From the NCBI GenBank assembly GCA_964019335.1, contig OZ025652.1:310001-374000 (forward strand): DNA of 64,000 bases, read 5' to 3'. How positions within the stretch are numbered: the first letter of the stretch is position 1; every line of letters starts with the position of its first letter. The translations under genes were made by a program, and so were the position numbers. The stretch comes from Diplonema japonicum (Eukaryota > Protista > Euglenozoa: Diplonemea). Below, piece after piece: positions 36,458 through 63,002 of the stretch. The notes beneath the pieces were generated by a model. It did not search any database, had not been told where the DNA came from, and saw only the letters and a list, made by a program, of their open reading frames with translations.

Positions 36458-39400
36458 TCAACGCGATGCCTTATACTTCGAGTACAGTAGTTTTGCATAG
36501 TACAACCAGTTCCCCACGTTACCTTGCGGTCCAAGAGGGGTGGACATCAACGCAGGGAAGAAGAGCAGCGCCCAGAACAGACTGAACCCAATCGTCATGA
36601 AGATCATGATACCGAACTTGTTGAAGAAGACAATAGTTGGGAAGAAGAGGAAAATCGAAGCCCCAAGAGTGGAAATGGCCCCCGACACAACAGAGATCCC
36701 AACACGTGCAAGCATGTCGCGTACCCTGCCTTCACGGTCGTGAGATTCAGACTCGATGTACGCCTCAGCAAGATGGGCCACAAAGTCAACAGAGAGACCA
36801 GGGACCATCACAAGACCTATACTTTCAAGGACACCAAGCTTCCAACCAATTATAACTGTCATTCCCATGGTGCAGACCACAACACAGGTGATGACCAACA
36901 CAGCAAAGAATGCCACCAGGATGTTTGTCGTCGCAAGTGTCAAGACGACAAAGGCCAACCCCACAGAGAGGAAGATCCCACTCAGTGCTTCTTCAACAAG
37001 TTTTGCTCTGACATAGATGAAGTCCAAAGAGGACTGGAAGCCTCCTGCCTGGGCTGCAACGCTTTTGCACGGTTCAGAGTTGTACTGGTCGTTGAACCAG
37101 TCCTCCCATGTGTTCCACAGGGCCTTCCCATCATCAGTGTCGATGTTCGAGGATTCAACAGTCAGCTTCAGCTCAGTTGAGATGAACCTCAGCCTTGTCT
37201 GCCCATCAACGTGCTCTGCATGGATGTAAGGCTTCCACATGGACAACACCTTCGGGTCCTCAAGCCACAGCACCAAAATGTCAAAGAACAAACTGTTATC
37301 CGCGCCCAGCCCAGTGATCTTGTTCCAGAGTGCCGTGTCGTTCGCGTCCACATGCTTCTTGAAGTCGATCAAAAAGCAGTCGATTGGGAAGTCTGGGTAG
37401 CCACCTGTCTTCCTCTCGTCAGACTTCTCTTGAGCCTTCTCACAGATCGACAGCATGCACCGCGCAGCAACTGGAAGGTCGAAGTTCGGGTCCCACACTG
37501 GCTTCCCTGGGTCGCCCACATCTGTTGCCAGGGTCCCAGACCTGTCGATGGGGTTCTCCTTGTCGATGCCCCATGCGAAGATCATCTTAACAGCATTCAC
37601 AGACCCACCACGTGCGAAGTGCTTCGGGTTCTCATCGAGGAACTTCTGATAGTTGTTCGATGACGGTAAGAATTGGGCGTTCTTCGGGTCCGGCTCCAGT
37701 TTACCTGCCTGAATACCAAACACGACGATGATCACGATAAACACGACTATGATCCCTATCTTCGCACCAATGATGCCTGATGAATATGCCTCCCTGAACC
37801 ACTGGCTCACAGCTGGCTCCGACTTCACTTCTTCCTTCTGTTCAATGTGCCTCCGCCCTTCCTCATCTATTACCACTTTTGTATTCTTCCCATCAAAGGA
37901 CACAGGCCTCAATTCCTGCTTCACATAATTCGCGATCTTCTTTGGGACACCGAAGCAGAACCTCCACTCCTCAAAGTGGGTTGCGAACATGAAGACCACC
38001 GTTGGGTAAAACACCATCACCGCACAGTAGTTCACAAAGACGAGCATCGCAGCGAAGATCCCAAAGGTCTGGATTGCTGGGAACGACGAGTTCGCGTTCG
38101 ACATGAAAGAAATCATAGTACTCAAGCTGGTGACAAGCATCGCCTTTCCGGCGTGCTTCCAGGTGTACGACATCCTCTTCCCAAGGCTTTTGAACTTGTG
38201 ACCAGACTGCTCCCACGTGTCAAGGAACACAAAGATGTCATCAGCACCGATCCCAAGAATGATGAAGATGGACAACATGTTGAAGACACCGAAGTACCTC
38301 TGTTGAAAGATCCCAAAGTACAGGAAGTAGGCCACAGGGAAACACATCAGGATCTGACCCATGCCCATCACAGCAAGCCACCAGGAGGAGGTCATGAAGG
38401 CGATGTAGACAAGAACGAATACCATGCTTGCAATGGCGAACATGGCATCCATGATGAGGAGTTCCTGGATGTAGAGTCCGAGCATGCCGTGCCCGTTGTA
38501 GATATACGACACACCACCCCCGCTGATCTGCCCGTCAGCAAGCCAAGTGTGGTACTCATCATACAACCACTGTGCAAGGTCTTCACTCTGCCCATCGGGG
38601 TCATCGTTCACTGTCTTGTACCCCTTCAGAGGGGCCCCGAAGGTGAACTCCGTCTTCACAGCCTTTGCAATCTGGTTCCCTGCCCCGAACTGTGAGTCGA
38701 CAAGCCTCAGGAAGTTGTAACTGTTCAGCCCCTCAACGGTGTTCCTGTCAGGGATAGAGTTCGCATAGGTGTGGACCTTCGGAACCTTGAAGTTCTCCTC
38801 GAGGATGAACTCGTCTGGGGTGCAGGTTGTCGACTTGTTGCAGTTCATGAGACCGATGGGGGTGGACGCCAGCTTGGAGCAAGGGGTTCCAAGGGAAGGG
38901 TCACAAGCCCACACAATGGTGTGGTGCACAGCACAGTTGTGGGACTGCGAGTTGATCTTCGTGATCATGTCGACATTGTTGCTCCTCTCGAATGCGACTT
39001 CAGTGCTGTTGTAGTCGATGAGGCAGTGGTCTGCGAACTCATTGCGGGCCATCACACGCTGCTCAAACTCGAACATCTTCTGAAGGATCTTGGTCTCAAG
39101 CACGTCACCGAACTCGGGGAAGTAGATGATCTCAAGGGTGAGGTCCTCACGCTCACCACCAAGTGTGTCGACAGACTGACGAAGTTCGATGTCAGGCGCG
39201 TTCAGGGTGTAGTCAGCAATGTCTTTCCCTTCCACGATGGCATCCGAACGTTGCTTAGTAACATGCCCCCGGAGGTAGAGGGGTACCTCCGAAGAGTAAG
39301 GGAAGAAGGAGGAGCCAGCTGCAAGCAGTATAATGATGAAGAGGAGGAAGAAACCGCAGAAGGACCCACAGGTGATGCAGTAGGCCTTTTTGGGTTGGTG

Positions 39401-39670
39401 CGAAATGGCATCCCACACAAAGTCGATCTTTCCTTCCAGCTTCTCGTCGTGGTGTTCAGAGTTCAAGGGGTGATCGGAGTGGTTCAGTGCGGGGCTATTG
39501 GTAGTGGGTGCAGGTGCCATTTCAACATCCGCAGGTGGGGGTGCGTGATAATACGTTAACCCATTGAAGCGAGGATCGAAGTCAGCAGCTGATTCGTTGT
39601 GCGGTGCGCCTGGCATCAAATGTACACCCAAAGGGTTGTGAGCGTTGTTGTTTTCCTTAAAGAAAGACAC
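36458..39670 (-). CDS. Patched/Dispatched-family transporter, copy 4
   Basis: 1070-codon ORF from GTG 39670; GxxxDD and GLSVD motifs. Confidence 0.9.
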   Translation of the reverse strand: MSFFKENNNAHNPLGVHLMPGAPHNESAADFDPRFNGLTYYHAPPPADVEMAPAPTTNSPALNHSDHPLNSEHHDEKLEGKIDFVWDAISHQPKKAYCITCGSFCGFFLLFIIILLAAGSSFFPYSSEVPLYLRGHVTKQRSDAIVEGKDIADYTLNAPDIELRQSVDTLGGEREDLTLEIIYFPEFGDVLETKILQKMFEFEQRVMARNEFADHCLIDYNSTEVAFERSNNVDMITKINSQSHNCAVHHTIVWACDPSLGTPCSKLASTPIGLMNCNKSTTCTPDEFILEENFKVPKVHTYANSIPDRNTVEGLNSYNFLRLVDSQFGAGNQIAKAVKTEFTFGAPLKGYKTVNDDPDGQSEDLAQWLYDEYHTWLADGQISGGGVSYIYNGHGMLGLYIQELLIMDAMFAIASMVFVLVYIAFMTSSWWLAVMGMGQILMCFPVAYFLYFGIFQQRYFGVFNMLSIFIILGIGADDIFVFLDTWEQSGHKFKSLGKRMSYTWKHAGKAMLVTSLSTMISFMSNANSSFPAIQTFGIFAAMLVFVNYCAVMVFYPTVVFMFATHFEEWRFCFGVPKKIANYVKQELRPVSFDGKNTKVVIDEEGRRHIEQKEEVKSEPAVSQWFREAYSSGIIGAKIGIIVVFIVIIVVFGIQAGKLEPDPKNAQFLPSSNNYQKFLDENPKHFARGGSVNAVKMIFAWGIDKENPIDRSGTLATDVGDPGKPVWDPNFDLPVAARCMLSICEKAQEKSDERKTGGYPDFPIDCFLIDFKKHVDANDTALWNKITGLGADNSLFFDILVLWLEDPKVLSMWKPYIHAEHVDGQTRLRFISTELKLTVESSNIDTDDGKALWNTWEDWFNDQYNSEPCKSVAAQAGGFQSSLDFIYVRAKLVEEALSGIFLSVGLAFVVLTLATTNILVAFFAVLVITCVVVCTMGMTVIIGWKLGVLESIGLVMVPGLSVDFVAHLAEAYIESESHDREGRVRDMLARVGISVVSGAISTLGASIFLFFPTIVFFNKFGIMIFMTIGFSLFWALLFFPALMSTPLGPQGNVGNWLYYAKLLYSKYKASR

Positions 39671-40355
39671 CCTGCTTACGATAAATAATTGTCCTGAGGT
39701 GTTGATTTTCTTTTGGTAACAGATGAAGTAAACTAAATATTAATAAAGATAGAAAAAAGAATAGAGATAAAAGAAGATCAAATCTTTTTCATAAAACAGG
39801 GGAACGGAGAGAGGAAGGAAGAGGGGCTGGCCATGCCAGGAGAAGCTTATTTACCAGAAAAGGTTGCCCTTTACTTGGTCAAATGACCTGTGTTCAAGGG
39901 AACAAAAACTAATTAATTAACGCTCCCGATAAAATATCAAAAGAGCGAAAAAGGTAGATACAACGGCGAGGGGGGGGAGAGCAGGGAGAGAGAGGGGGGG
40001 GTGAGAGGATAGCGAAGAAGAAAGGGTACGAAGATTAGGGGGGGGAAAAAAAAGAAAAGCCTCAACTGCTTGTGTATGCATGAACAGTAAGAGGTCAGAA
40101 GAAGTAAGTTATGTCTTTAAGTATAACAGAGTTGGCAAAAAAAAAAAAATCTTCATCAAAAGTAAAGGTTCTAGTGGTCAGACCTAAAGTTACACCTAAT
40201 CGTAATGTGCTTCCATTAGTTGACAATTTATTTTTCCAGTCACACTGGGGCTCCATAGACATGTGTGGCTGGTGTCCACTTTTTAGTTAGTTAAAAGAAA
40301 GAAGTGAAAGAAAACAAGGGATATGGAACAAGAACATACTGTTCCTTCACACACC

Positions 40356-43300
40356 TCATATCTCTCCCGCTGGAGGTAGCTCGTGAGTGTTGCGCGCCTT
40401 GAACTTGTAGTACAGTTTCTTGGCCACGTACAACCAGTTCCCCATGTTCCCCTCCGGTCCAAGAGGGGTAGACATCAACGCAGGGAAGAACACCAGCGCC
40501 CAGAACAGACTGAACCCAATCGTCATGAAGATCATGATACCGAACTTGTTGAAGAACTGAATAGTTGGGAAGAAGAGGAACAGAGATGCCCCAAGAGTGG
40601 AAATGGCCCCCGACACAATCGAGATCCCAACACGTGCAAGCATGTCGCGTACCCTGCCTTCACGTTCATGAGATTCAGACTCGATGTACGCCTCAGCAAG
40701 ATGGGCCACAAAGTCAACAGAGAGACCAGGGACCATCACAAGGCCAATACTTTCAAGAGCACCAAGCTTCCAACCCAAAATGGGAATCATTCCCATGGTG
40801 CAGACCACAACACAAGAAATGACCAACACAGCAAAGAATGCCACCAGGATGTTTGTCGTCGCAAGTGTCAGGACAGCAAAGGCTAAACCGATCGAGAAGT
40901 AGATCCCACTCAGTGCTTCTTCAACAAGTTTTGCTCTGACATAGACGAACTCCAAAGAGGACTGGAAGCCTCCTGCCTGGGCTGCAACGCTTTTGCACGG
41001 TTCAGAGTTGTACTGGTCGTTGAACCAGTCCTCCCATGTGTTCCACAGGGCCTTCCCGTCGTCGGGATCGATGTTCGAGGATTCAACAGTCAGCTTCAAC
41101 TCAGTTGAGATAAATCGTACTTGTGGAGTGCCGTCCACAAGCTCTGCATGGATGTAAGGCTTCCACATGGACAACACCTTCGGGTCCTCAAGCCACAGCA
41201 CCAGCATGTCAAAGAACTGACCACCCTTCGCGCCCGGCCCAGTGATCTTGTTCCAGAGTGCCGTGTCGTTCGCGTCCACATGCTTCTTGAAGTCGATCAA
41301 AAAGCAGTCGATTGGGAAGTCTGGGTAGCCACCTGTCTTCCTTTCGTCAGACTTCTCTTGAGCCTTCTCACAGATCGACAGCATGCACCGCGCAGCAACT
41401 GGAAGGTCGAAGTTCGGGTCCCACACTGGCTTCCCTGGGTCTTCCTCATCTGTTGCCAGGGTTCCAGACCTGTCGATGGGGTTCTCCTTGTCGATGCCCC
41501 ATGCGAAGACCATCTTGACAGCATTCACAGACCCACCACGGGCGAAGTGCTTCGGGTTCTCATCGAGGAACTTCTGGTAGTTGTCAGATGACGGTAAGAA
41601 TTGGGGTGCTTTTGGGTCTGCCTCCAGACCCCCTGCCTGGATCCCAAACACAACAATCATGGCTATGAATATCAAAATGATCACTATCTTCGCACCAATG
41701 ATGCCTGATGAATACGACTCCCTGAACCACCGACACACAGCAGGCTCGGTACTCGTACATTCTTCGAAGTGTTCCCGCCCCTGTTCGTCTGTCACAATCT
41801 TGACGTTTTTAAAGGTTGGTGAAGTCAGCCCCTGCTTCACAAGAGTTGCAAACTTTGAAGGCCACCCACAGCAGAACTTCCACTCCTCGAAGAAGGTTGC
41901 GAACATGAAGACCACCGTTGGGTAAAACACCATCACCGCACAGTAGTTCACAAGGACCAGCATCGCAGCGAAGAGCCCAAAGGTCTGGATTGCTGGGAAC
42001 GACGAGTTCGCGTTCGACATGAAAGAAATCATAGTACTCAAGCTGGTGACAAGCATCGCCTTCCCTGCGTGCTTCCAGGTGTACGACATCCTCTTCCCAA
42101 GGCTTTTGAACTTGTGACCAGACTGCTCCCACGTGTCAAGGAACACAAAGATGTCATCAGCACCGATCCCAAGAATGATGAAGATGCACAGTAAATTAAA
42201 GACACCGAAGTACCTCTGTTGAAAGATCCCAAAGTACAGGAAGTAGGCCACAGGAAAGGACATCAAGATCTGACCCATGCCCATCACAGCAAGCCACCAG
42301 GAGGAGGTCATGAAGGCGATGTAGATAAGAACGAATACCATGCTTGCAATGGCGAACATTCCATCAGTGACCATGAGGCTCTGGATGTAGAGGCTGAGCA
42401 TGCCGTGCCCGTTGTAGACATACGACACACCCCCGCTGATCTGCCCGTCAGCAAGCCAAGTGTGATACTCATCGAACAACCACTCCGCAAGGTCTTCACT
42501 CTGCCCATCGGGGTCATCGTTCACTGTCTTGTACCCCTTCAGAGGGGCCCCGAAGGTGAACTCCGTCTTCACAGCCTTTGCAATCTGGTTCCCTGCCCCG
42601 AACTGTGAGTCGACAAGCCTCAGGAAGTTGTAACTGTTCAGCCCCTCAACGGTGTTCCTGTCAGGGATAGAGTTCGCATAGGTGTGGACCTTCGGAACCT
42701 TGAAGTTCTCCTCGAGGATGAACTCGTCTGGGGTGCAGGTTGTCGACTTGTTGCAGTTCATGAGACCGATGGGGGTGGACGCCAGCTTGGAGCAAGGGGT
42801 TCCAAGGGAAGGGTCACAAGCCCACACAATGGTGTGGTGCACAGCACAGTTGTGGGACTGCGAGTTGATCTTCGTGATCATGTCGACATTGTTGCTCCTC
42901 TCGAATGCGACTTCAGTGCTGTTGTAGTCGATGAGGCAGTGGTCTGCGAACTCATTGCGGGCCATCACACGCTGCTCAAACTCGAACATCTTCTGAAGGA
43001 TCTTGGTCTCAAGCACGTCACCGAACTCGGGGAAGTAGATGATCTCAAGGGTGAGGTCCTCACGCTCACCACCAAGTGTGTCGACAGACTGACGAAGTTC
43101 GATGTCAGGCGCGTTCAGGGTGTAGTCAGCAATGTCTTTCCCTTCCACGATGGCATCCGAACGTTGCTTAGTAACATGCCCCCGGAGGTAGATGGGGACA
43201 TCCGAAGAGAAGGGGAAGAAGGAGGAGCCAGCCACCATAAGTATGACGATGAAGAGGAAGAAGAAACCGCAGAAGGACCCACAGGTGATGCAGTAAGCCT

Positions 43301-43553
43301 TTTTGGGTTGGCGCGATATGGCATCCCACACAAAATCGATCTTTCCTTCCAGCTTCTCGTCCAGCATGCCCTGGTTTAAGCTAGGGCCTTCGTTGCAGCT
43401 TAGAGCAGGGCTGATTTGGGTGGGGACCATCTCCACTGACACGGGTTGAGGAGCCTTGTACATGTGGTCAGTCATTGCTGGACCAGTAGTAACTTGCGAT
43501 GAGATGAGGCCTACGCTCAAAGGGTTGCTGTTGTCCTCGTGTGGAAAAGACAC
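40356..43553 (-). CDS. Patched/Dispatched-family transporter, copy 5
   Basis: 1065-codon ORF from GTG 43553; same motifs. Confidence 0.9.
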   Translation of the reverse strand: MSFPHEDNSNPLSVGLISSQVTTGPAMTDHMYKAPQPVSVEMVPTQISPALSCNEGPSLNQGMLDEKLEGKIDFVWDAISRQPKKAYCITCGSFCGFFFLFIVILMVAGSSFFPFSSDVPIYLRGHVTKQRSDAIVEGKDIADYTLNAPDIELRQSVDTLGGEREDLTLEIIYFPEFGDVLETKILQKMFEFEQRVMARNEFADHCLIDYNSTEVAFERSNNVDMITKINSQSHNCAVHHTIVWACDPSLGTPCSKLASTPIGLMNCNKSTTCTPDEFILEENFKVPKVHTYANSIPDRNTVEGLNSYNFLRLVDSQFGAGNQIAKAVKTEFTFGAPLKGYKTVNDDPDGQSEDLAEWLFDEYHTWLADGQISGGVSYVYNGHGMLSLYIQSLMVTDGMFAIASMVFVLIYIAFMTSSWWLAVMGMGQILMSFPVAYFLYFGIFQQRYFGVFNLLCIFIILGIGADDIFVFLDTWEQSGHKFKSLGKRMSYTWKHAGKAMLVTSLSTMISFMSNANSSFPAIQTFGLFAAMLVLVNYCAVMVFYPTVVFMFATFFEEWKFCCGWPSKFATLVKQGLTSPTFKNVKIVTDEQGREHFEECTSTEPAVCRWFRESYSSGIIGAKIVIILIFIAMIVVFGIQAGGLEADPKAPQFLPSSDNYQKFLDENPKHFARGGSVNAVKMVFAWGIDKENPIDRSGTLATDEEDPGKPVWDPNFDLPVAARCMLSICEKAQEKSDERKTGGYPDFPIDCFLIDFKKHVDANDTALWNKITGPGAKGGQFFDMLVLWLEDPKVLSMWKPYIHAELVDGTPQVRFISTELKLTVESSNIDPDDGKALWNTWEDWFNDQYNSEPCKSVAAQAGGFQSSLEFVYVRAKLVEEALSGIYFSIGLAFAVLTLATTNILVAFFAVLVISCVVVCTMGMIPILGWKLGALESIGLVMVPGLSVDFVAHLAEAYIESESHEREGRVRDMLARVGISIVSGAISTLGASLFLFFPTIQFFNKFGIMIFMTIGFSLFWALVFFPALMSTPLGPEGNMGNWLYVAKKLYYKFKARNTHELPPAGEI

Positions 43554-44632
43554 CCTGGCAGATTTATTTTTTTACGGTAGGAAACCTTGATTGGTGTGTT
43601 AATTACTTTCGAATGTCAAAAAAGAGTACAACTAAACGGGAGAGGAAGAGAATAAACCAATAAAAGAAGAGAATAACAACGCACGCGGTACCAAGTTTGA
43701 CTTTCTTTTTCCTTCCAAGCCAGTAAACAGCATTTCCTGGGAAAAAGTTCCTCGGCCGCGTACGTTGTTTCTCAAAAAAGAGAAACAAAAGGTCGACGAA
43801 AGAAAGGGATGCAAGAAAATTTGATCTTGTAAAAAAGAAAGTCAAAGTTCGATCCTTGCACGTCAAGGCGACACAAAGAATCCTGCTTTACAAATTCTTT
43901 TTTTTAGTTTCTCCTTTTTTTTGTCCGGGAAAATCCAAGAGGTGACACTCGCAAGGTCGTGAGCTCTGTCTCTTGGCACACATCGGTCCCCTAATAAAAT
44001 CAAGAGCGCGATTTAAAAAAATATATATGTATATGTTTATATATAAAAGAGGCACTGTAAATCTCTTATTTCTTTCGGAAAAAAGGGTACTTTTGACCCA
44101 AAGAAAACAATTAAGAGATTTTACAGTAATGTTCCGGGGAGAGAGCTTGTGGGATGGGGGTCAAGAAAAAAAGAGGAGGAAAAAAAAAGGGTCTATCTTT
44201 TGATGCCCCCTTCACGGAGTGTTCTGTCCTTGCGTCACTCCTATGAGAGCTGCGTGGTTGATATTCCAATTTCCATTTTAGCGGAAACTCTGTTCGTTCC
44301 GAGAGGCGAAAGATGACCTTGCTGCCAGAAGAAATGAAATAGTACGGCTAACGGCTTCTGGTTCTTCTTTAAACGACAGAAAAGACTCCCAAGGCAGCTC
44401 CGTTCCAAGAAAAAAGAGGGAAAAAAAATAATAAGAAGAAGAATGCCCCTGGGTGTAGAGGCGTTGAAGACCCTGTCCGTTGATTAATGCAACAGTTGCA
44501 AAGTATTCTTTTTTTTTTTTAGTGCTTTATTTATTTCAGCGCGGTTTTCTTTTTTTTTTATTTATTTTCCCTTCCAAATTGCAATAACAAGTGCTTCTGT
44601 AATCATCAAAGAAGAGGAGGAAAAAAAAAATA

Positions 44633-44762
44633 ATTCTTTATGACTATATGTCTTTGTTGTTCGCACGAGCAAAAAAGTTTTAAAAAGCTGCGAAAACTTT
44701 TTGCTCGGCACAAGTTGCATATAGTTATAAAATCATTTTTTGAAAGATAAATATTTGTAACA
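44633..44762. repeat. Dispersed palindromic (MITE-like) repeat, compact copy
   Basis: Outer arms TTATGACTATATG/CATATAGTTATAA and inner arms GAGCAAAAAAGTTTT/AAAACTTTTTGCTC. Second copy at 12091-12285. Confidence 0.75.
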
Positions 44763-45140
44763 AAAAAAAAAAAAGCGGAACTAGGAATACAATGGGGTAA
44801 AAAAAAAAAAAATCAAAGTGCAGAACAAAAAAAAATATGTAAAAAGAGAGGAGACAGCAACATTTTTAAGGCCAGGTGTGCACTGTAAGGAAAAAAATAA
44901 GAAACGGGTTCTTTGGGGGGGGGGGGGGGGGGGATGGGAGGGATGCACACATGGAAAAGGACAAACCCCATGATTGAATCGTAGGTGTGCTGCGTTGCCA
45001 GTACCTGTTCAGGTAAATTAAAGAATGAAAAAATTTAATTCAACAAAATATACGAAGAATAAAGGAGGCCAGTGCCAATTGCACTCTGCACAAGTACTGC
45101 CTAGTATTGATGCAGGGAAATAAACATAGACCACCAACCC

Positions 45141-48100
45141 CTAGATGTGCCCACTTGTCGGTTCGGGAGCCGTTCCAGGGCCTCCGCCCTTGAACTTGTA
45201 GTACAGTAGTTTTGCATAGTACAACCAGTTCCCCATGTTCCCCTCCGGTCCAAGAGGGGTGGACATCAACGCAGGGAAGAACACCAGCGCCCAGAACAGA
45301 CTGAACCCAATCGTCATGAAGATCATGATACCGAACTTGTTGAAGAACTGAATAGTTGGGAAGAAGAGGAACGTTGAAGCCCCAAGAGTGGAAATGGCCC
45401 CCGACACAACAGAGATCCCAACACGTGCAAGCATGTCGCGTACCCTATTCTGACGGTCGTGAGATTCAGACTCGATGTACGCCTCAGCAAGATGGGCCAC
45501 AAAGTCAACAGAGAGACCAGGGACCATCACAAGGCCAATACTTTCAAGAGCACCAAGCTTCCAACCCAAAATGGGAATCATTCCCATGGTGCAGATCACA
45601 ACACAGGTGATGACCAACACAGCAAAGAATGCCACCAGGATGTTTGTCGTCGCAACTGTCAGGACAGCAAAGGCCAACCCCACAGAGAGGATGATCCCAC
45701 TCAGTGCTTCTTCAACAAGTTTTGCTCTGACAAAGATGAACTCCAAAGAGGACTGGAAGCCTCCTGCCTGGGCTGCAACGCTTTTGCACGGTTCAGAGTT
45801 GTACTGGTCGTTGAACCAGTCCTCCCATGTGTTCCACAGGGCCTTCCCGTCGTCGGGATCGATGTTCGTAGATTCAACAGTCAGCTTCAACTCAGTTGAG
45901 ATGAAGCGCATTACAGTACTGCCGTCGTCCACAAGCTCTGCATGGATGTAAGGCTTCCACATGGACAACACCTTCGGGTCCTCAAGCCATTCTATTAAAA
46001 TGTCATAGAACAGACTGTTATCCGCGCCCAGCCCAGTGATCTTGTTCCAGAGTGCCGTGTCGTTCGCGTCCACATGCTTCTTGAAGTCGATCAAAAAGCA
46101 GTCGATTGGGAAGTCTGGGTAGCCACCTGTCTTCCTTTCGTCAGACTTCTCTTGAGCCTTCTCACAGATCGACAGCATGCACCGCGCAGCAACTGGAAGG
46201 TCGAAGTTCGGGTCCCACACTGGCTTCCCTGGGTCGTCCACATCTGTTGCCAGGGTTCCAGACCTGTCGATGGGGTTCTCCTTGTCGATGCCCCATGCGA
46301 AGACCATCTTGACAGCATCCACAGACCCACCACGTGCGAAGTGCTTCGGGTTCTCATCGATGAACCTCTGGTAGTTGTTAGATGACGGTAAGAACTGGGG
46401 TGCTTTTGGGTCTGCCTCCAGACTCCCTGCTTGGATCCCCATCACGACGATCAGTGTTATGAATATCAAAATAATTATGATCTTCGCACCAATGATGCCC
46501 GACGAGTACGACACCCTGAACCACCGACACACAGGAGGCTCCGACACTTCCGGCTTTTGTTGCTCGGCATCCTCCAGTCTCGGATCGCTTGTCGCCGCGT
46601 TATTGAAGCTTGGTGGGTTCAGCTCCTGTTTCACAAAGGAGGCTAGCATGTTCGGAACACCGAAGCAGAACTTCCACTCCTCGAAGAAGGTTGCGAACAT
46701 GAAGACCACCGTTGGGTAAAACACCATCACCGCGCAGTAGTTCACAAGGACGAGCATCGCAGCGAAGATCCCAAAGGTCTGGATTGCTGGGAACGACGAG
46801 CTTGCGTTCGACATGAAAGAAATCAGAGTACTCAAGCTGGTGACAAGCATCGCCTTCCCTGCGTGCTTCCAGGTGTACGACATCCTCTTCCCAAGACCTT
46901 TGAATTTGTGACCAGACTGCTCCCACGTGTCAAGGAACACAAAGATGTCATCAGCACCGATCCCAAGAATGATGAAGATGGACAACATGTTGAAGACACC
47001 GAAGTACCTCTGTTGAAAGATCCCAAAGTACAGGAAGTAGGCCACAGGGAAGCACATTAAGATCTGTCCGACACCCATCACAGCAAGCCACCAGGAGGAG
47101 GTCATGAAGGCGATGTAGACAAGAACGAATACCATGCTTGCAATGGCGAACATGGCATCCATGATGAGGACCTCCTGGATGTAGAGGCTGAGCATGCCGT
47201 GCCCGTTGTAGATATACGACACACCACCGCTGATCTGCCCGTCGCCAAGCCAGCTGTGGTACTCATCATACAACCACTCCGCAAGATCGTCGCTCTGCCC
47301 ATCGGGGTCATCGTTCACTGTCTTGTACCCCTTCAGAGGGGCCCCGAAGATGAACTCCGTCTTCACAGCCTTTGCAATCTGGTTCCCTGCCCCGAACTGT
47401 GAGTCGACAATCTTCAGGAAGTTGTAACTGTTCAGCCCCTCAACGGTGTTCCTGTCAGGGATAGAGTTCGCATAGGTGTGGACCTTCGGAACCTTGAAGT
47501 TCTCCTCGAGGATGAACTCGTCTGGGGTGCAGGTTGTCGACTTGTTGCAGTTCATGAGACCGATGGGGGTGGACGCCAGCTTGGAGCAAGGGGTTCCAAG
47601 GGAAGGGTCACAAGCCCACACAATGGTGTGGTGCACAGCACAGTTGTGGGACTGCGAGTTGATCTTCGTGATCATGTCAATATTGTTGCTCCTCTCGAAT
47701 GCGACTTCAGTGCTGTTGTAGTCGATGAGGCAGTGGTCTGCGAACTCATTGCGGGCCATCACACGCTGCTCAAACTCGAACATCTTCTGAAGGATCTTGG
47801 TCTCAAGCACGTCACCGAACTCGGGGAAGTAGATGATCTCAAGGGTGAGGTCCTCACGCTCACCACCAAGTGTGTCGACAGACTGACGAAGTTCGATGTC
47901 AGGCGCGTTCACAGTGTGGTCAGCAATGTCTTTCCCTTCCGCGATGGCATCGTAGCGCTCTTGGGTCACGTGGTCACGGAGGTAGAGGGGTACCTCCGAA
48001 GAGAAGGGGAAGAAGGAGGATCCTGCAGTTATGATCAATATCAGGAAGAGGAGGAAGAAACCGCAGAAGGACCCACAGGTGATGCAGTAGGCTTTCTTGG

Positions 48101-48317
48101 GTTGGTGCGATATGGCATCCCACACAAAATCGATCTTTCCTTCCAGCACTTCATCATCTGCATGAGATGTTATTTGGTGATCGTTCTCAGGGCCTCGAGG
48201 CAACATTTCCACAGCAGGTGCGCTTGGGACTGTACCTTTCCCTGTTTCAGCATATTGCAAATTGAGAGACATAAGTCCCGTGCTTAAACAGTAATTGCTG
48301 CCGTGTGCGAAAGACAC
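45141..48317 (-). CDS. Patched/Dispatched-family transporter, copy 6
   Basis: 1058-codon ORF from GTG 48317; same motifs. Confidence 0.9.
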   Translation of the reverse strand: MSFAHGSNYCLSTGLMSLNLQYAETGKGTVPSAPAVEMLPRGPENDHQITSHADDEVLEGKIDFVWDAISHQPKKAYCITCGSFCGFFLLFLILIITAGSSFFPFSSEVPLYLRDHVTQERYDAIAEGKDIADHTVNAPDIELRQSVDTLGGEREDLTLEIIYFPEFGDVLETKILQKMFEFEQRVMARNEFADHCLIDYNSTEVAFERSNNIDMITKINSQSHNCAVHHTIVWACDPSLGTPCSKLASTPIGLMNCNKSTTCTPDEFILEENFKVPKVHTYANSIPDRNTVEGLNSYNFLKIVDSQFGAGNQIAKAVKTEFIFGAPLKGYKTVNDDPDGQSDDLAEWLYDEYHSWLGDGQISGGVSYIYNGHGMLSLYIQEVLIMDAMFAIASMVFVLVYIAFMTSSWWLAVMGVGQILMCFPVAYFLYFGIFQQRYFGVFNMLSIFIILGIGADDIFVFLDTWEQSGHKFKGLGKRMSYTWKHAGKAMLVTSLSTLISFMSNASSSFPAIQTFGIFAAMLVLVNYCAVMVFYPTVVFMFATFFEEWKFCFGVPNMLASFVKQELNPPSFNNAATSDPRLEDAEQQKPEVSEPPVCRWFRVSYSSGIIGAKIIIILIFITLIVVMGIQAGSLEADPKAPQFLPSSNNYQRFIDENPKHFARGGSVDAVKMVFAWGIDKENPIDRSGTLATDVDDPGKPVWDPNFDLPVAARCMLSICEKAQEKSDERKTGGYPDFPIDCFLIDFKKHVDANDTALWNKITGLGADNSLFYDILIEWLEDPKVLSMWKPYIHAELVDDGSTVMRFISTELKLTVESTNIDPDDGKALWNTWEDWFNDQYNSEPCKSVAAQAGGFQSSLEFIFVRAKLVEEALSGIILSVGLAFAVLTVATTNILVAFFAVLVITCVVICTMGMIPILGWKLGALESIGLVMVPGLSVDFVAHLAEAYIESESHDRQNRVRDMLARVGISVVSGAISTLGASTFLFFPTIQFFNKFGIMIFMTIGFSLFWALVFFPALMSTPLGPEGNMGNWLYYAKLLYYKFKGGGPGTAPEPTSGHI

Positions 48318-52358: not shown

Positions 52359-53540
52359 TCAAATATGGCACCCGCACCTGAGCCCCGCCATCATGACGAG
52401 CCTGTTTCTTATCGACTCTACTTCGTTCAGGAGCAGCGGGCTGAACCCTGCGGTACTTTGTAAGCCTTTCAGCTCAAGATCGCACGAGGTGTCGTGGGGA
52501 ACCGGCCAGGCAGCCAACAGCAACGCAGCGTACTCAACAGACGGCCACGGGTGGTGGGTGTTGGAGAGAATAGATTGTGCAACCTTGAAGCACGCTTGAC
52601 GGCGGAGGTCTTTGTAGAGATAGGTGAGAGGTGCCTCCGCGCCTTCAAGATCCTCTTGCGTGTATATTTCGTGAGTGGTGAGGAGCGAGGAGAGAAAAGA
52701 AGGGTCAGACGAAAGTCCTGAAAGGACACCTTCTGCAGCGGAAGCTGATGAATGTAAAGCATTTGGGATGACGGTGTTGACCATGGCATGAACGGAGCCC
52801 CAGTCGGCGCTTGAGCGAGCAAGCCCCGTCAGACACGGTGTACGATTCTTCTCAATAACAAACCACCCTCTTGTGAGGTTTGTAACGGGGTCGACCTGAT
52901 CCATGCTTTTCCACAACTCTTCTATGTGGACCCAGTAAGGAGGGTATTTGAAGCGTGCAGTGTCCAAGATCAACACTAGCTTTTTAGAAGCGTGGAACGC
53001 GGCTAAAGGGGAAAAATGCCCGTCCCCTGTCTGGCCAAGATACCCCCGGGAGAAGGTTGCTACAATGGCTTCAGTTGGGTTGGGTGTCATAGTTGCCTTC
53101 ACCAAGTCGTTGGTGAGTTCTTCACAAGAGTGAAGCGGTGCTCTTTTCGGTGTACTTTTCGCTCCGTTGAGCTCCGCCATGCATTGGAACTCCTCGAATG
53201 TGATTCCTTTCTTCCTGACGACCTCAAGGGGGATGTGCACATCCAGGCTCTCCTCTGTCACGTGTTGTACCCCGATTTTTTTCACCTCGGTTCTGTTTTC
53301 CACGTTCAAAGTGTTCAACACTATTGAGAGGCTTCCCAGCCCGCAGTACGCTGGTTCGTTCTGGGTGTTGAACTGCTCTGCCAGCCCGAAGTACCCTTCG
53401 CAACCCCCCTCTATCAAACATTCCCTGAACAGCGCCCTTCCTTCCTTTGACGAAAAGCTCGTAAGGCTCCCCGGCAGTTTTCTCCTATATATCCCTACCT
53501 GCGGGGAAATTGTGCATGTCAGCCGCCGTGAGGGCTTCAT
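52359..53540 (-). CDS. PCS1: Phytochelatin synthase (glutathione gamma-glutamylcysteinyltransferase)
   Basis: YRRKLP, FSSKEG, QFNTQNEPAYCGLGSL (Cys), QTGDGHFSPL (His), LILDTARFKYPPYWV (Asp). Likely start ATG 53540. Confidence 0.92.
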   Translation of the reverse strand: MKPSRRLTCTISPQVGIYRRKLPGSLTSFSSKEGRALFRECLIEGGCEGYFGLAEQFNTQNEPAYCGLGSLSIVLNTLNVENRTEVKKIGVQHVTEESLDVHIPLEVVRKKGITFEEFQCMAELNGAKSTPKRAPLHSCEELTNDLVKATMTPNPTEAIVATFSRGYLGQTGDGHFSPLAAFHASKKLVLILDTARFKYPPYWVHIEELWKSMDQVDPVTNLTRGWFVIEKNRTPCLTGLARSSADWGSVHAMVNTVIPNALHSSASAAEGVLSGLSSDPSFLSSLLTTHEIYTQEDLEGAEAPLTYLYKDLRRQACFKVAQSILSNTHHPWPSVEYAALLLAAWPVPHDTSCDLELKGLQSTAGFSPLLLNEVESIRNRLVMMAGLRCGCHI

Positions 53541-54009
53541 AGCCCCCCCTCCCTCCCTCCTTTTCTTAAGAGAATAAAACAAAAGTGCGAGAGAAGCAAA
53601 AAAAAAAAAAAACGGGGGGAAACTAAGAAAAACTTTTGGAAGGGGGGGGGTGTTTTTTTTTTCCATTCCTCCTCTTCCTCTTTTTTAAAGCTCACTAAGG
53701 GAAAAAAAAAAAAAAAAAAAAAAAAAAAACATAGGTTCTTTTTTTTTCATAAACTCGTTCGTACGCGTCGAAAAACGAACGAACGGAGACAGGAGGGGAA
53801 GGGGGGGGTGAGAAGAACAAATAATGGGGGATGGGGGGAAAGGGGAACGACCCGTTAAGAAAAAAATATGAAAAAAAAAACGTCACAAAAAAATAAAAAT
53901 GGCGGAGCTTTTCTTGTTTTTTTTTTTATAAATGTTTTGTTAAAAAAAGGGGGAAAACACTTCAAAAAAAAAATGGGGGGGAGAGGGTGTACACTACTCC
54001 TAATATCTC

Positions 54010-59227: not shown

Positions 59228-60007
59228 TTACAATCCCCTGCCTCGCAAGAGAGCCCGTTGGTTGTGGTAATGCGTGGCACAGAAGGGGGAGGTGACGGGC
59301 GCGCGTCGACATATCAAGATCATGTACTTCAAAAACGCTTGGGCGTACTGTCTCCCGCACACCTTTGAGGGGTCCTCCTCACACCAGGTTTTGAAAATTT
59401 GGAAAGGGACGAATTCAGCAACATCCGATTCCTCATTAACCTTGATCTGATGGACCTCACTGGTCACTGGGTACAGGAAAACCGTTGAGTTTTGCACATC
59501 GATACGCTGAGCCTGCGTGTTCTTCCACAAAAAATTCTCGAGCAATATTAACTCCTTCACGTTGGCGTTGATGTCCAGCTCTTCCTTCAAACCCCTTAAC
59601 GCTGTCTCGTACATCGTCTCACCAGGCTCAACATGTTCACCTGTTACACCCCATTTCCCCGCACAGGTTACCGATGTAGTGCTGCGTTTTTGCAGCAAAA
59701 TCGTTTCTTTTTTAAAGTCAACCACAAAGACCCATGTTGCCCAGTGTGCCACGCCTCTTGTATGGGCGTCGTCGATGTTGATGGGGCGCAGCTTCTGCCG
59801 CGACACGGTGTCGTACGCCTCGATGTAGCTGTTGTGGATGCTTGTCTGTGTTTTTCCGACAAATGAGAAAGTTGTGTACAATGTGAGAACAACGAGGAGG
59901 AAGAAGGACATAACCCATGAAGGCTGTTTCTTATCGTCTCTCGGCATCCTACCAGCAGGGCTTGCTAAGGAGGCGTCATCGCCATCCGATTCTGTCTTCC
60001 ATTTCAT
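59228..60007 (-). CDS. Nudix hydrolase (IDI/YfcD-like) with N-terminal signal anchor
   Basis: AHTRGVAHWATWVFV..ILLQKRS..GKW..GEHVEPGETMYETALRGLKEELDI (variant Nudix box); hydrophobic segment near residues 31-50. Confidence 0.85.
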   Translation of the reverse strand: MKWKTESDGDDASLASPAGRMPRDDKKQPSWVMSFFLLVVLTLYTTFSFVGKTQTSIHNSYIEAYDTVSRQKLRPINIDDAHTRGVAHWATWVFVVDFKKETILLQKRSTTSVTCAGKWGVTGEHVEPGETMYETALRGLKEELDINANVKELILLENFLWKNTQAQRIDVQNSTVFLYPVTSEVHQIKVNEESDVAEFVPFQIFKTWCEEDPSKVCGRQYAQAFLKYMILICRRAPVTSPFCATHYHNQRALLRGRGL

Positions 60008-60874: not shown

Positions 60875-61207
60875 TCATTTCATCGTTATTATAACGGTTG
60901 TCTTCCTCCCCAGTGCCCCGCGTACCTCTTCTCTTCCCTTTACCGTTTTCCCGTTTATTTTTAGGATTTTTCTACCCAGGAGGGTTTTTTTGCTATGTGT
61001 CTTCGTTATGTGCATTGTGGGGTCGATTCTTATCTTGTCGCTTTTGCTGACCTCAACCTCAATCTCGGGGGTCAACGGAGGGGTGGTGGAATACTTTCTG
61101 ATGAGCTTGTTCGCAAGTACTTCTCTGTGAAGATCTTGCTCTGCTTCATCGAGCCTTTGTTCCAGATCTGCAAGCACCTCAGAATTCACCGGGCTTGTGG
61201 AAGCCAT
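60875..61207 (-). CDS. Hypothetical protein (coiled coil plus possible PDZ-like C-terminus)
   Basis: 110-aa ORF; LGRKILKINGKTV...EEVRGAL..TVIIT resembles the C-terminal half of a PDZ domain. Confidence 0.55.
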   Translation of the reverse strand: MASTSPVNSEVLADLEQRLDEAEQDLHREVLANKLIRKYSTTPPLTPEIEVEVSKSDKIRIDPTMHITKTHSKKTLLGRKILKINGKTVKGREEVRGALGRKTTVIITMK

Positions 61208-61482
61208 AGACAGAGTTCTTGTGTTGTGTGTCTGTTAATGAAAAACCGACGAATGGATGGTAGGGGGGGGGGGAATGCGAACACTTTAAAAAAAAAAGAA
61301 CGTTTGCTATAAAAAAAAAAAGAAAAGGGAAAAAATAAGAACGAAAAGAGGTTTGTTTCAATGAGATAATTAAAAGAAAGAAAAAAAAAAACCATTCATT
61401 CCCTTCTCCCTTCGGACCGTGTCTACTAAAAAAAAAACCCCCCCCTCCCTTTTTTTTTAAAAAAAAAGAATTAATGTGTTCC

Positions 61483-62079
61483 TCAATTCTTTTGAACTTT
61501 CTTCCCGACTTTTTTTTTTGGTATGGCTTTCTTTGCCGTTTTTTGCTTCTTTGCAGGTACTTTTTTAATCTTCGTAACAGGGCTTTTGGCCTTCTTAGCG
61601 CTAGCAACAGTCGCTTTTTTAAGCTTCGTGGGTTTAACCTTCTTAGGAGGGCTAGCAGCAGTCGGCTTGGTGGTCACCGTTTTCTTCACACCATTTTTTT
61701 TCCGCCCGGTTTTGGGAGGTACAGGAACAGGTGTGGCTAAGCCGCCTGTGAGACATTCCCTAGCTCGTTGTGCTCCCGCAATATGTCTGATGTTAAGGGT
61801 TTTTGATTTACAAATGGCAGCCACGATGTTAGCATCCTTCACCAAGTCATGTATGTGTCTCTCAGTGGCCTCCTGGAGCATCTCAAGAGCCCCCGGGCTG
61901 CACCTGAGACCCGACTTAAAAGTATCCACCTCGTTACGAATTAATCTACTAAAGGGTGCTTTTTGGAGAACCTGGGTTGTGCTCTTTGACAAGCGAAGGT
62001 ACTGTCTCTTTGCGACCGTTCCCGCCTTGAACCTTTTCTTTTCTACCAAACCCTTGCGTGCTTTTTTCACAGGTTTCAT
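61483..62079 (-). CDS. Divergent histone H3-fold protein fused to an H1-like Lys/Ala/Pro-rich C-terminal tail
   Basis: KRFKAGTVAKRQYLRLSKSTTQVLQKAPFSRLIR...LQEATE...DANIVA...KTL..HI..AQRAR aligns without gaps to H3 residues ~39-131. It is followed by ~87 aa with 29 Lys and no acidic residue. Confidence 0.88.
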   Translation of the reverse strand: MKPVKKARKGLVEKKRFKAGTVAKRQYLRLSKSTTQVLQKAPFSRLIRNEVDTFKSGLRCSPGALEMLQEATERHIHDLVKDANIVAAICKSKTLNIRHIAGAQRARECLTGGLATPVPVPPKTGRKKNGVKKTVTTKPTAASPPKKVKPTKLKKATVASAKKAKSPVTKIKKVPAKKQKTAKKAIPKKKVGKKVQKN

Positions 62080-63002
62080 TTTTTTTTTCTTCTTTTTTTT
62101 TTTTAAAAAAAAAATACCTTTTGTGAGTATGAGGGGTTTGGGGGTTTCATTTCAGCAGCATTACCTGAGCTGCCAGTAGTCATGAAAATGTGCCATGGAC
62201 ACTGCTATTGACTCCATTGGGGGGTGGGGGGGCGAAGTAAAAAAATAAAAAATGGAAAATACAGCCAAGGGAGATAAAAGAAAAAGGGGAGGGGAAATGT
62301 GGGGAGGGGGGAGTGGGGCAAATTTTATTCTCTGCACCCAAACTTTTGAAAACGGGGAGGGGGGGGGGGGGGGGGGGGGTAAGGGGAGGAAGACACAAAC
62401 AAATTCTAAAAAAGAAAAAATAAAGAAAAAGAGGGGAAAAAATGGGGGTTAAAACAAAGGGGTTTTAAAAGGACACTTTTTTTTTTTCTTTCTCTTTTTC
62501 TTCTTCTGAAGGGGGGGGGAAGCAGAGAAAAGGGACTTTTACACCAAATCGGTGTGTTTCTATCTGTTAATGCCGATGACAAAAAAAAAAAAGCGAAACA
62601 GGAGAGGGAAAAAAAAACACACACGTCATGTGCTTTTCCTCCTATACCCATCTTTTTTTCTTTTTTGCTCCTTTAATCCTTTTTTGAGATCCTGCAGGTC
62701 TTTTCTCCTTTAAACAAGACAGGAATCGAAATCTCTTAATAGAAGTGGGGAAGTGGGAAGGGTGAAGGGGGGCGGGCACAAAAAAAAAGGGGGGGTGGAA
62801 GTAGAAGTAAAAAAACAATGGTGCGGGTGCGTTTACAAAGGGAGAGAATTTCTTTTTTTTTTTTCTAACTTTTTTTTTTATTTTTTATTTTTATATTTTA
62901 ATCGCAGCGTCAACGTACCCTCTGCTGCTGGGGGCAATCACAAAAAAATACGTTGCAGTACGTTAAAGGATGATTTTTTTTTTTTTTCTTCTTCTTCTGC
63001 TT

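What the first reader, a model, noticed from the sequence alone, without database searches (positions are those of the whole stretch)
61483..62079. Histone H3 fold fused to a linker-histone H1-like tail, with CenH3-type substitutions and an eroded H3-H3 interface
Seen: one intronless 198-aa ORF with a ~14-aa N-tail, an ungapped H3 fold, and ~87 aa of K/A/P/T/V (29 Lys, no D/E, with SPPK and KSP sites). By manual alignment to canonical H3 it carries Q68S, F84C, T107A, H113I, D123H, L126G and I130A; loop 1 is not lengthened. Established: canonical H3 ends ~4 aa after the fold; loss of Q68/F84/T107 is typical of CenH3; H113, D123, L126 and I130 build the H3-H3' four-helix bundle; trypanosomatid H1 is only a lysine-rich tail; macroH2A has an H1-like linker but on H2A. 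Inference: this is a core histone carrying its own chromatin-condensing tail. It may be an atypical centromeric or condensation variant that does not form normal (H3-H4)2 tetramers.
Basis: partly seen in the sequence, partly recalled or inferred. Interest (0 to 1): 0.88.

Follow-up and report, generated by a model that had tools for sequence, protein, structure and literature searches.

The report
Histone H3 variant with H1-like tail
A marine-protist (diplonemid-like) genome carries a real, transcribed histone H3 variant with a changed H3-H3 contact and an 87-residue lysine-rich tail like that of a linker histone, a design known for H2A but, as far as I could find, not described for H3.

Summary
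Window 61483-62079 (minus strand) is one intact 198-aa ORF. It has a 16-aa basic N-stub, an ungapped H3 fold (aa 17-111) and an 87-aa tail with 29 Lys, 1 Arg and no Asp/Glu (net +30).

Assembled contigs of four runs from three studies match the ORF with no differences or gaps. Two of these runs look like RNA, with a gene-sized contig covering the ORF from codon 3, the fold-tail junction and the stop.

The genome looks diplonemid. Its nearest relative is a Diplonema ambulator transcript protein that also has a K-rich C-tail (clade support 98/93). Two tail-less proteins from public run assemblies complete a four-member clade. All four share V101H and D123H and have lost H113 and F84. The H3-H3' contact is therefore remodelled and conserved, not eroded.

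The CenH3 reading is not supported: loop 1 has no insertion, T107A is the lineage's canonical state, and Q68S also occurs in short kinetoplastid-type H3s.

Most likely this is a lineage-specific nucleosomal H3 variant whose tail binds linker or neighbouring DNA. That works like plant H2A.W or an H1 C-terminal domain, in a genome with no winged-helix H1. The function is inferred.

The scan holds a duplicate note on this stretch (s1-861344) and none on other DNA.

The parts
61483..62079 (-). Complete CDS of the H3-fold/K-rich-tail variant (198 aa plus TGA stop at 61483-61485). It is single copy in the 62.5-Mb assembly.
62032..62079 (-). N-terminal stub, aa 1-16 (MKPVKKARKGLVEKKR). It replaces the roughly 40-aa H3 tail and has no K4/K9/K27 context.
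61747..62031 (-). H3 histone fold, aa 17-111. AF2 predicts helices alphaN 21-32, alpha1 40-54, alpha2 62-89 and alpha3 97-111. Variant residues are S44 (H3 Q68), C60 (F84), H77 (V101), I89 (H113), H99 (D123), G102 (L126) and A106 (I130).
61714..61746 (-). Gly/Pro-rich hinge GGLATPVPVPP (aa 112-122) between alpha3 and the basic tail.
61486..61746 (-). Lysine-rich C-terminal tail, aa 112-198. It has net charge +30, no acidic residue, and is predicted disordered (pLDDT 55-68). SP sites lie at aa 143 (SPPK; 61642-61653) and aa 166 (SPVT; 61573-61584). A8 and A10 runs lie at 61694-61701 and 61510-61519.
61423..62072 (-). Stretch covered by one gene-sized contig of run X5 (682 nt), separate from the neighbouring genes. 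It covers the ORF from codon 3 (the match stops at 62072 at a skipped T-run), the fold-tail junction, the stop and 60 nt of 3' UTR. Run X10 has a similar contig over 61440-62072.
   Evidence: X5 is RNA because its contig over the neighbouring gene carries the spliced-leader 3' end
60875..61207 (-). Downstream neighbouring gene (110 aa, no Pfam hit). Its transcript contig in X5 ends at 61218 joined to the spliced-leader 3' end. This was used only to show that X5 is RNA.

Best explanation
This is a genuine, transcribed, single-copy histone H3 variant of a diplonemid-like euglenozoan. It belongs to a small clade of H3 variants with a conserved re-designed H3-H3' four-helix-bundle contact: H113 becomes hydrophobic, D123 becomes His and V101 becomes His. 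In this species and in Diplonema ambulator the fold is followed, after a Gly/Pro hinge, by a disordered, strongly basic tail (+30) that resembles an H1 C-terminal domain. Shown: the gene, the fold class, the tail composition, transcription across the junction, a relative with the same architecture, and the absence of a winged-helix H1 in the genome. Inferred: the fold pairs with H4 and enters nucleosome-type particles. Most DNA-contact residues are kept (R49, K56, K64, R69, R72, R83, K115, T118), and C-terminal tags on H3 are tolerated in a diplonemid. Also inferred: the altered 113/123 pair makes these particles distinct from canonical ones (self-pairing or no tetramer). Also inferred: the two tails bind and neutralise linker or neighbouring DNA, acting as a built-in linker histone that compacts chromatin locally, possibly regulated by phosphorylation at the SP sites. 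Diplonemids keep their chromosomes condensed in interphase, which gives such a protein a plausible place.
For: ORF and composition. H3 class: Pfam 5.8e-17, all top PDB sequence hits are H3 and the printed alignments are ungapped, and the AF2 model superposes on H3 chains with TM 0.9 and rmsd 1.3-1.5 A. No sequence error: 0 differences and 0 gaps in contigs of four runs from three studies. Transcription: gene-sized contigs in X5 and X10. X5 is RNA because a contig joins the neighbouring gene to TTTCTGTACTTTATT, a 16-mer present 252 times in the genome and 0 times in the control, and not at that site. The same 198-aa protein is already in EukProt. Relatives: P0022 (D. ambulator transcript, 177 aa, K/R 39% in its C-tail, ends KKVKKN) is sister with support 97/88 and 98/93. 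P0130 and P0176 join with 96/88 and 93/96. Of 13 positions where the query and P0022 both depart from conserved H3, 5 carry the same residue. No PF00538 match in the six-frame genome search. Fold and tail share the same low codon bias, GC3 0.50 and 0.44. Context from papers: diplonemid chromosomes are condensed in interphase and H3.1-YFP C-terminal fusions stain chromatin (10.1101/2025.03.21.644664). Euglenozoan H1 lacks the winged helix, and the wheat H2A C-tail binds linker DNA (PMC3380720).
Against: There is no protein-level evidence that the tail is translated, and none for localisation, partners or chromatin incorporation. Pairwise scores do not separate orthology from general H3 similarity: P0022 scores 80.5 bits against the query fold and 80.1 bits against this genome's canonical H3 (HMMER even ranks canonical H3 first). 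The clade joins long branches. Order-level similarity of the two tails is weak (74 against 59 +/- 7 in shuffles, p about 0.03) and is no better than the similarity to an unrelated metagenomic H4-H3 doublet tail, so the tails could be convergent. No ortholog was seen among D. papillatum proteins. GC3 is far below that of canonical H3 (0.85), which suggests modest expression. L126G and I130A might simply weaken tetramer formation.
Confidence: 0.45

Rival explanations
1. H3.V-like boundary or telomere variant. The protein would mark special loci such as telomeres, or the ends of polycistronic transcription units, as trypanosome H3.V does. The tail would be an accessory, and the protein would not be a general compaction factor.
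For: It meets all three operational H3V criteria of PMC7052976: a divergent N-tail, no Gln in alpha1, and no loop-1 insertion. Genes in the window all lie on one strand and transcripts are trans-spliced, so the transcription system is kinetoplastid-like. Low codon bias fits a low-abundance variant.
Against: No trypanosomatid H3.V sequence was available to place in the tree, so homology is untested. H3.V has no C-terminal tail (my recollection, not tested here). Q68 loss is not diagnostic in this lineage (P0152, P0157).
Confidence: 0.2
2. Stage-specific packaging histone. The protein would be protamine-like or sperm-histone-like and would be used in a particular life stage such as starved, swimming or sexual cells.
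For: SP-containing basic tails on core histones are classic for sperm-type packaging (sea-urchin sperm H1 and H2B; from knowledge). Distribution among diplonemids is patchy. Codon bias is low.
Against: Transcript contigs are present in runs from two studies (X5 and X10), and three further runs of X5's study (X6, X8, X9) hold a similar share of the stretch. Culture conditions are unknown. No stage data exist.
Confidence: 0.12
3. Centromeric H3 (CenH3/CENP-A).
For: Q68 and F84 are lost, the N-tail is divergent, and the fold is divergent.
Against: There is no loop-1 insertion. T107A is lineage-wide. Another Q68-less H3 variant exists on contig C10. The published diplonemid CENP-A candidate has a long loop 1 (PMC11633173), and even that protein is not on metaphase chromatin (10.1101/2025.03.21.644664).
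Confidence: 0.05
4. Non-nucleosomal histone-fold protein. With a changed four-helix bundle it would form only dimers (with H4 or another partner) and act as a DNA-coating or bridging protein, or as a chaperone-bound store, rather than as part of an octamer.
For: H113I, D123H, L126G and I130A all lie in the H3-H3' bundle (role of these residues from established nucleosome structures).
Against: alphaN and most DNA-contact residues are conserved. In P0022 positions 126 and 130 are Val, a conservative change.
Confidence: 0.13
5. Artefact. The tail would be an untranslated A-rich 3' region joined to the fold by an assembly indel, or a read-through of the real stop.
For: A6-A10 runs lie in the tail. 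The opposite strand also has a long ORF.
Against: Four runs from three studies agree with 0 gaps. A D. ambulator transcript has the same architecture. The other two frames of the tail have stops. Fold and tail have the same codon bias.
Confidence: 0.03

Closest known systems
Canonical and replacement histone H3 (own genome, other diplonemids, model eukaryotes)
   Same: Same fold, aligned without gaps from alphaN to alpha3. Identity is 38-41%. Most DNA-contact residues are kept. It shares diplonemid-type states A107, P86 and E90 with the genome's own H3.
   Different: The N-tail is 16 aa instead of about 40 aa. The changes are Q55S, Q68S, F84C, V101H, H113I, D123H, L126G and I130A. It has an 87-aa basic C-tail, whereas H3 ends 0-4 residues after alpha3. 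It is a single gene outside the histone arrays, with GC3 0.5 against 0.85.
Plant H2A.W, wheat H2A and sea-urchin sperm H2B/H1 (core histones with SPKK-type basic tails)
   Same: The working principle is the same: a core histone carries its own basic, S/TP-containing tail that binds linker DNA and favours compaction (PMC3380720 cites the wheat H2A tail-linker DNA work; the rest is from knowledge).
   Different: Those tails sit on H2A (C-terminal) or H2B/H1 (N-terminal) and are much shorter. Here the tail is on H3, is 87 aa long, and comes with a changed H3-H3' interface.
Linker histone H1 C-terminal domain, and the winged-helix-less H1 of Euglenozoa
   Same: Composition is similar (K about 33%, with A/P/T/V, no acidic residues, an S/TPxK site) and disorder is predicted. 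Euglenozoan H1 lacks the globular domain (PMC3380720).
   Different: No sequence homology is detectable: there is no Pfam or PDB hit for the tail and no paralog in the genome. The tail is covalently attached to a core histone.
Trypanosomatid H3.V
   Same: Divergent N-tail, no Gln68 and no loop-1 insertion (criteria in PMC7052976).
   Different: H3.V has no long C-tail (recollection). Kinship was not tested.
CenH3/CENP-A, including the P. papillatum candidate DIPPA_32769
   Same: Divergent fold and N-tail, and Gln68 replaced.
   Different: No longer loop 1 (PMC11633173).
Lysine-rich C-tails of giant-virus histones (Marseillevirus H-alpha, medusavirus H2A) and the metagenomic H4-H3 doublet P0165
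   Same: Long lysine-rich C-terminal tails on histone folds (PMC9145170). The tail of P0165 follows an H3-like fold and starts PPKPPKTGKKK, compared with PPKTGRKK here.
   Different: The viral tails described are on H2A-like folds. P0165 is a doublet with an acidic block, and its fold is only about 35% identical to this one.

Membership tests
Histone H3 family | Histone fold with the H3-specific alphaN helix, alignable to H3 over alphaN-alpha3 | tested here: met
   PF00125 at 5.8e-17. The best 60 PDB sequence hits are all H3, and the printed alignments are ungapped over aa 7-107 = H3 32-132. The AF2 model has four helices and its best structural matches are H3 chains, with TM 0.9 and rmsd 1.3-1.5 A.
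Histone H3 family | Assembly with H4 into (H3-H4)2 and nucleosomes | not testable with these tools
   Only single-chain prediction is available. H113, D123, L126 and I130 are changed.
CenH3/CENP-A | [quoted passage not shown] | tested here: not met
   The alignment to H3 is ungapped through loop 1.
CenH3/CENP-A | Loss of the conserved Gln in alpha1, and a divergent N-tail | tested here: met
   Q68S and a 16-aa unrelated N-stub. Q68S also occurs in short kinetoplastid-type H3s (P0152, P0157), so it is not specific.
CenH3/CENP-A | Centromere or kinetochore localisation | not testable with these tools
   This needs tagging and microscopy.
Trypanosomatid H3.V | Divergent N-tail, no Gln68 and no loop-1 insertion (PMC7052976) | tested here: met
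Trypanosomatid H3.V | Phylogenetic grouping with H3.V, and telomere or termination-site localisation | not tested
Localisation is experimental.
Linker histone H1 (winged-helix type) | Globular winged-helix domain PF00538 | tested here: not met
   No PF00538 hit in the protein or anywhere in the genome.
H1 C-terminal-domain-like basic tail (a functional class, not a homology family) | Long disordered segment with about 30-40% Lys plus Ala/Pro, no acidic residues, and S/TPxK sites | tested here: met
   87 aa with 29 K, 11 P, 10 A and 0 D/E, SPPK at aa 143, pLDDT 55-68.
New diplonemid-type H3 variant clade (query, P0022, P0130, P0176) | Shared derived V101H, D123H, non-His at 113 and non-aromatic at 84; monophyly | tested here: met
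   support 96/88 and 93/96 for the four, and 97/88 and 98/93 for the tail-bearing pair. Long branches are involved, so caution is needed.

The most novel reading that the evidence does not exclude
Diplonemids have no globular H1 and keep their chromosomes condensed throughout interphase. In this reading they use a dedicated H3 variant as a cis-acting linker histone. Its re-designed 113/123 four-helix-bundle pair forces variant-only (or tetramer-less) particles. Its two +30 tails clamp linker DNA, giving a self-compacting nucleosome type. This would be a new way to build condensed chromatin, and a case of an H1-like function moving onto H3.
Probability: 0.2. Interest if true: 0.85.

Novelty: new variant of a known kind. 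Interest (0 to 1): 0.62.

Why it matters
H3 is the most constrained core histone at its C-terminus, and I found no described H3 variant with a long linker-histone-like C-tail in four of my five full-text searches. This variant is transcribed. It recurs in a second diplonemid. It comes with conserved changes in the residue pair that holds the two H3 copies together. It sits in a lineage whose permanently condensed chromosomes and unknown kinetochore are open problems (PMC11633173; 10.1101/2025.03.21.644664). It gives a concrete, taggable candidate for how these abundant marine protists compact chromatin without a conventional H1. It is also a natural test of whether an H1-type tail works when fused to the nucleosome core.

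Tried and rejected
- The word-indexed search with the whole protein found only the protein itself.
- The tail alone has no paralog in the genome, no PDB match and no Pfam match.
- The metagenome scan gave 35 H3-like loci, none above 41% identity and none reaching into the tail.
- The ESM Atlas gave only generic histone clusters below 0.9.
- Reciprocal best-hit logic failed to settle orthology, so I relied on the tree and on shared derived residues.
- Tail-to-tail alignment significance is weak, so I do not claim the tails are homologous.
No dN/dS could be computed.
- One paper search failed on a term that was too short.
- CenH3 was rejected on loop 1. An assembly artefact was rejected on the read evidence.

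Full report
**1. What is in the sequence**

On the minus strand, 62079 to 61483 is a single 198-codon ORF from ATG to TGA. Twenty-four sense codons lie upstream of the ATG before the next in-frame stop, but they include a lysine run encoded by an A-tract.

- Residues 1-16 are a short basic stub.
- Residues 17-111 form the histone fold.
- Residues 112-122 (GGLATPVPVPP) look like a hinge.
- Residues 112-198 form the 87-aa tail. It has 29 Lys, 1 Arg, 11 Pro, 10 each of Ala, Thr and Val, and no Asp or Glu, for a net charge of +30.
- SPPK lies at aa 143-146 and SPVT at aa 166-169.

**2. Fold class**

- Pfam gives only PF00125 (5.8e-17) and the related PF00808.
- The best 60 distinct PDB sequences are all H3. 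The three printed alignments are ungapped from residue 7 to 107 against H3 32-132, so loop 1 has no insertion.
- An AlphaFold2 model built on a 34-sequence alignment has helices at 21-32, 40-54, 62-89 and 97-111, with pLDDT 83-95 in the fold. The tail is unstructured, with pLDDT 55-68.
- Foldseek's best matches are nucleosomal H3 chains, with target TM about 0.9 and rmsd 1.3-1.5 A.
- The substitutions Q68S, F84C, T107A, H113I, D123H, L126G and I130A are all present.

**3. Is the ORF an assembly artefact?**

The tail contains A6, A8 and A10 runs. A one-base error in the A8 run would end the protein near residue 131.

Logan contigs of four runs from three studies cover 61440-62072 with no differing letters and no gaps. 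Fold and tail have the same weak codon bias, GC3 0.50 and 0.44. Canonical H3 has 0.85 and other genes of the window have 0.59-0.79. The gene is single copy in the 62.5-Mb assembly.

**4. Transcription**

In runs X1 and X7 one contig spans this gene, the spacer and the next gene, as DNA would. In X5 and X10 the contigs are gene-sized and separate.

- The X5 contig is 682 nt and covers 61423-62072.
- The X10 contig is 666 nt and covers 61440-62072.
- The match stops at 62072 only because the tool skips the T-run at 62073-62123. About 32 more letters of each contig lie beyond it.

X5 is RNA. Its contig over the neighbouring gene ends at 61218 joined to AATAAAGTACAGAAA. The reverse complement, TTTCTGTACTTTATT, is the 3' end of a spliced leader. 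The 16-mer with the terminal G occurs 252 times in the genome and 0 times in the reversed control, and it is not encoded at that site.

A processed mRNA therefore carries the fold, the junction, the tail and the stop as one unit. The RNA nature of X10 is inferred from contig shape only.

The identical 198-aa protein is already present in EukProt. Its accession is hidden from me. Translation of the tail is not shown.

**5. Which organism**

- The genome's canonical H3 is 142 aa, starts MPRSS..., and has many copies on contig C29.
- It groups with Diplonema papillatum and Rhynchopus euleeides H3 with support 93/72 and 91/68. The smaller second tree left this part unresolved.
- All large ORFs of the window are on one strand, and transcripts are trans-spliced.
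- I therefore treat the genome as diplonemid or diplonemid-like. This is an inference.
- A six-frame search of the genome with the winged-helix linker-histone model PF00538 finds nothing. That fits the statement that euglenozoan H1 lacks that domain (PMC3380720).

**6. Relatives**

An exhaustive phmmer search of 1.84 billion representatives gave 3233 hits. Apart from the protein itself, the two best-scoring hits with a single H3 fold reach only 42-45% identity (P0017, P0018).

Among the retrieved proteins, only P0022 has both a similar fold and a comparable C-tail.

- P0022 is 177 aa and comes from a Diplonema ambulator Trinity transcript in EukProt.
- Its C-tail is 57 aa, 39% K+R, with one acidic residue, and it ends KKVKKN. 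The query ends KKVQKN.

A profile search added P0130 and P0176. These are 143 and 145 aa, come from assemblies of public runs, and have no K-rich tail.

In maximum-likelihood trees built on the fold only:
- The query and P0022 are sisters, with support 97/88 and 98/93.
- P0130 joins with 96/88, and P0130 with P0176 join with 93/96.

These are long branches, so I also looked for shared derived states.
- All four have His at H3 positions 101 and 123.
- All four have lost His113 (I/A/F/F) and Phe84 (C/V/I/I).
- The query and P0022 also share Q55S, L61V, Q68S and G102D.
- Of 13 conserved-H3 positions where both depart, 5 carry the same residue.

This supports a real clade.

Caveats:
- Pairwise scores do not distinguish orthology. 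P0022 scores 80.5 bits against the query fold and 80.1 bits against this genome's canonical H3.
- Order-level similarity of the two tails is weak, about 2 SD above shuffles. It is no better than the similarity to the tail of an unrelated metagenomic H4-H3 doublet.
- The tails may therefore be homologous or convergent.
- No counterpart turned up among D. papillatum proteins or in JGI metagenome contigs.

**7.

The core idea stands: this is a core H3 with its own H1-like tail. The CenH3 leaning does not.

- Loop 1 has no insertion. That is criterion (i) for CenH3 in PMC7052976 and a key feature of the P. papillatum candidate in PMC11633173.
- T107A is simply the diplonemid canonical state.
- Q68S also occurs in short kinetoplastid-type H3s (P0152, P0157).
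- The genome has another Gln68-less variant on contig C10, in line with an earlier scan note of a CenH3-like variant elsewhere.

By the operational criteria of PMC7052976 the protein actually fits 'H3V-like': a divergent N-tail, no Gln and no loop-1 insertion. Kinship to trypanosomatid H3.V could not be tested.

The interface is not eroded. The 113/123 pair normally forms the His-Asp bond across the H3-H3' bundle (established nucleosome structure). It is replaced in the same way in all four clade members, which suggests selection for a different pairing rule. L126G and I130A are specific to this protein; P0022 has Val at both positions.

**8. Mechanism**

Shown:
- The gene, the H3 fold and the basic disordered tail.
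- Transcription across the junction.
- A second species with the same architecture.
- No globular H1 in the genome.

Inferred:
- The fold pairs with H4 and enters nucleosome-type particles. alphaN and most DNA-contact residues are kept. C-terminal YFP fusions of H3 stain chromatin in a diplonemid (10.1101/2025.03.21.644664).
- The changed 113/123 pair separates these particles from canonical ones.
- The hinge lets two +30 tails reach linker or neighbouring DNA and neutralise it, as H1 C-terminal domains and the SPKK tails of plant H2A do (PMC3380720).
- The SP sites would allow cell-cycle control.

Diplonemid chromosomes stay condensed in interphase, and how this is managed is an open question (10.1101/2025.03.21.644664).

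Short K-rich C-ends are a theme in this genome's histones. H2B ends ...KSKKN and H2A has a roughly 35-aa K/D/E tail. The H3 tail is an extreme case of a local tendency.

I put about 0.9 on 'real expressed H3 variant with a fused basic tail' and about 0.45 on the full statement including the compaction mechanism. The rivals are listed separately in the report: an H3.V-like locus marker, a stage-specific packaging histone, a non-nucleosomal dimer, CenH3 and artefact.

**9. Novelty**

Basic linker-binding tails on core histones are known for H2A (plant H2A.W, the macroH2A linker, giant-virus H2A-like histones; PMC9145170, PMC3380720) and for sperm H2B. Four of my five full-text searches found no description of such a tail on H3, and none in diplonemids. 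I rate this as a new variant of a known kind. Its interest is raised by the conserved interface change and by the biology of the host lineage.

**10. Limits**

- Only contigs, not raw reads, were available, so transcript ends and expression levels are not established.
- No multimer modelling was possible.

Noticed in passing
L015:707-1354 (-) = G000:C25, within 446054-448365: A 215-aa ORF holds an H3 fold (aa 11-113, PF00125 4.4e-31) followed in frame by an H4-like histone fold (aa 141-204). It is a candidate cellular H3-H4 doublet histone. It looks like a canonical H3-H4 gene pair fused by loss of the spacer and the H4 N-tail.
   Followed up: partly
L016 (G000:C10:541206-543472), minus strand, 151-aa ORF: A second divergent H3 variant with Q68E, H113Y, D123A, a one-residue deletion in loop 1 and a short S/P/K/Q-rich C-extension. 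It is possibly the 'CenH3-like' variant noted elsewhere in the scan.
   Followed up: partly
L059, L061, L062, L063, L064, L066 (G000 contigs C29, C25, C65, C86, C109): The genome's H2B copies end in K-rich stretches finishing ...KKN. H2A copies carry C-tails of about 35 aa rich in K/D/E or K/S/A. Lysine-rich C-ends are a general feature of this organism's histones.
   Followed up: partly
protein P0165 (ENA metagenome, 290 aa): An H4-H3 doublet histone, of the kind known from giant viruses, whose H3-like half is followed by a 110-aa tail with lysine-rich and acidic blocks. The tail starts PPKPPKTGKKK, resembling PPKTGRKK at the start of the tail studied here.
   Followed up: partly
whole genome G000; window 61218: The spliced-leader 3' 16-mer TTTCTGTACTTTATTG occurs 252 times, dispersed over many contigs and sometimes in direct tandem 16 nt apart. 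The neighbouring gene's transcript is trans-spliced at about 61217-61218.
   Followed up: partly
window 36458-48317 (-) and 26060-29224 (-): A tandem series of ORFs of about 1060 aa. The one scanned (45141-48317) has Patched and sterol-sensing domains. Several of the listed ORFs start at GTG. A phytochelatin synthase gene lies at 52359-53666 and a NUDIX gene at 59228-60007.
   Followed up: partly
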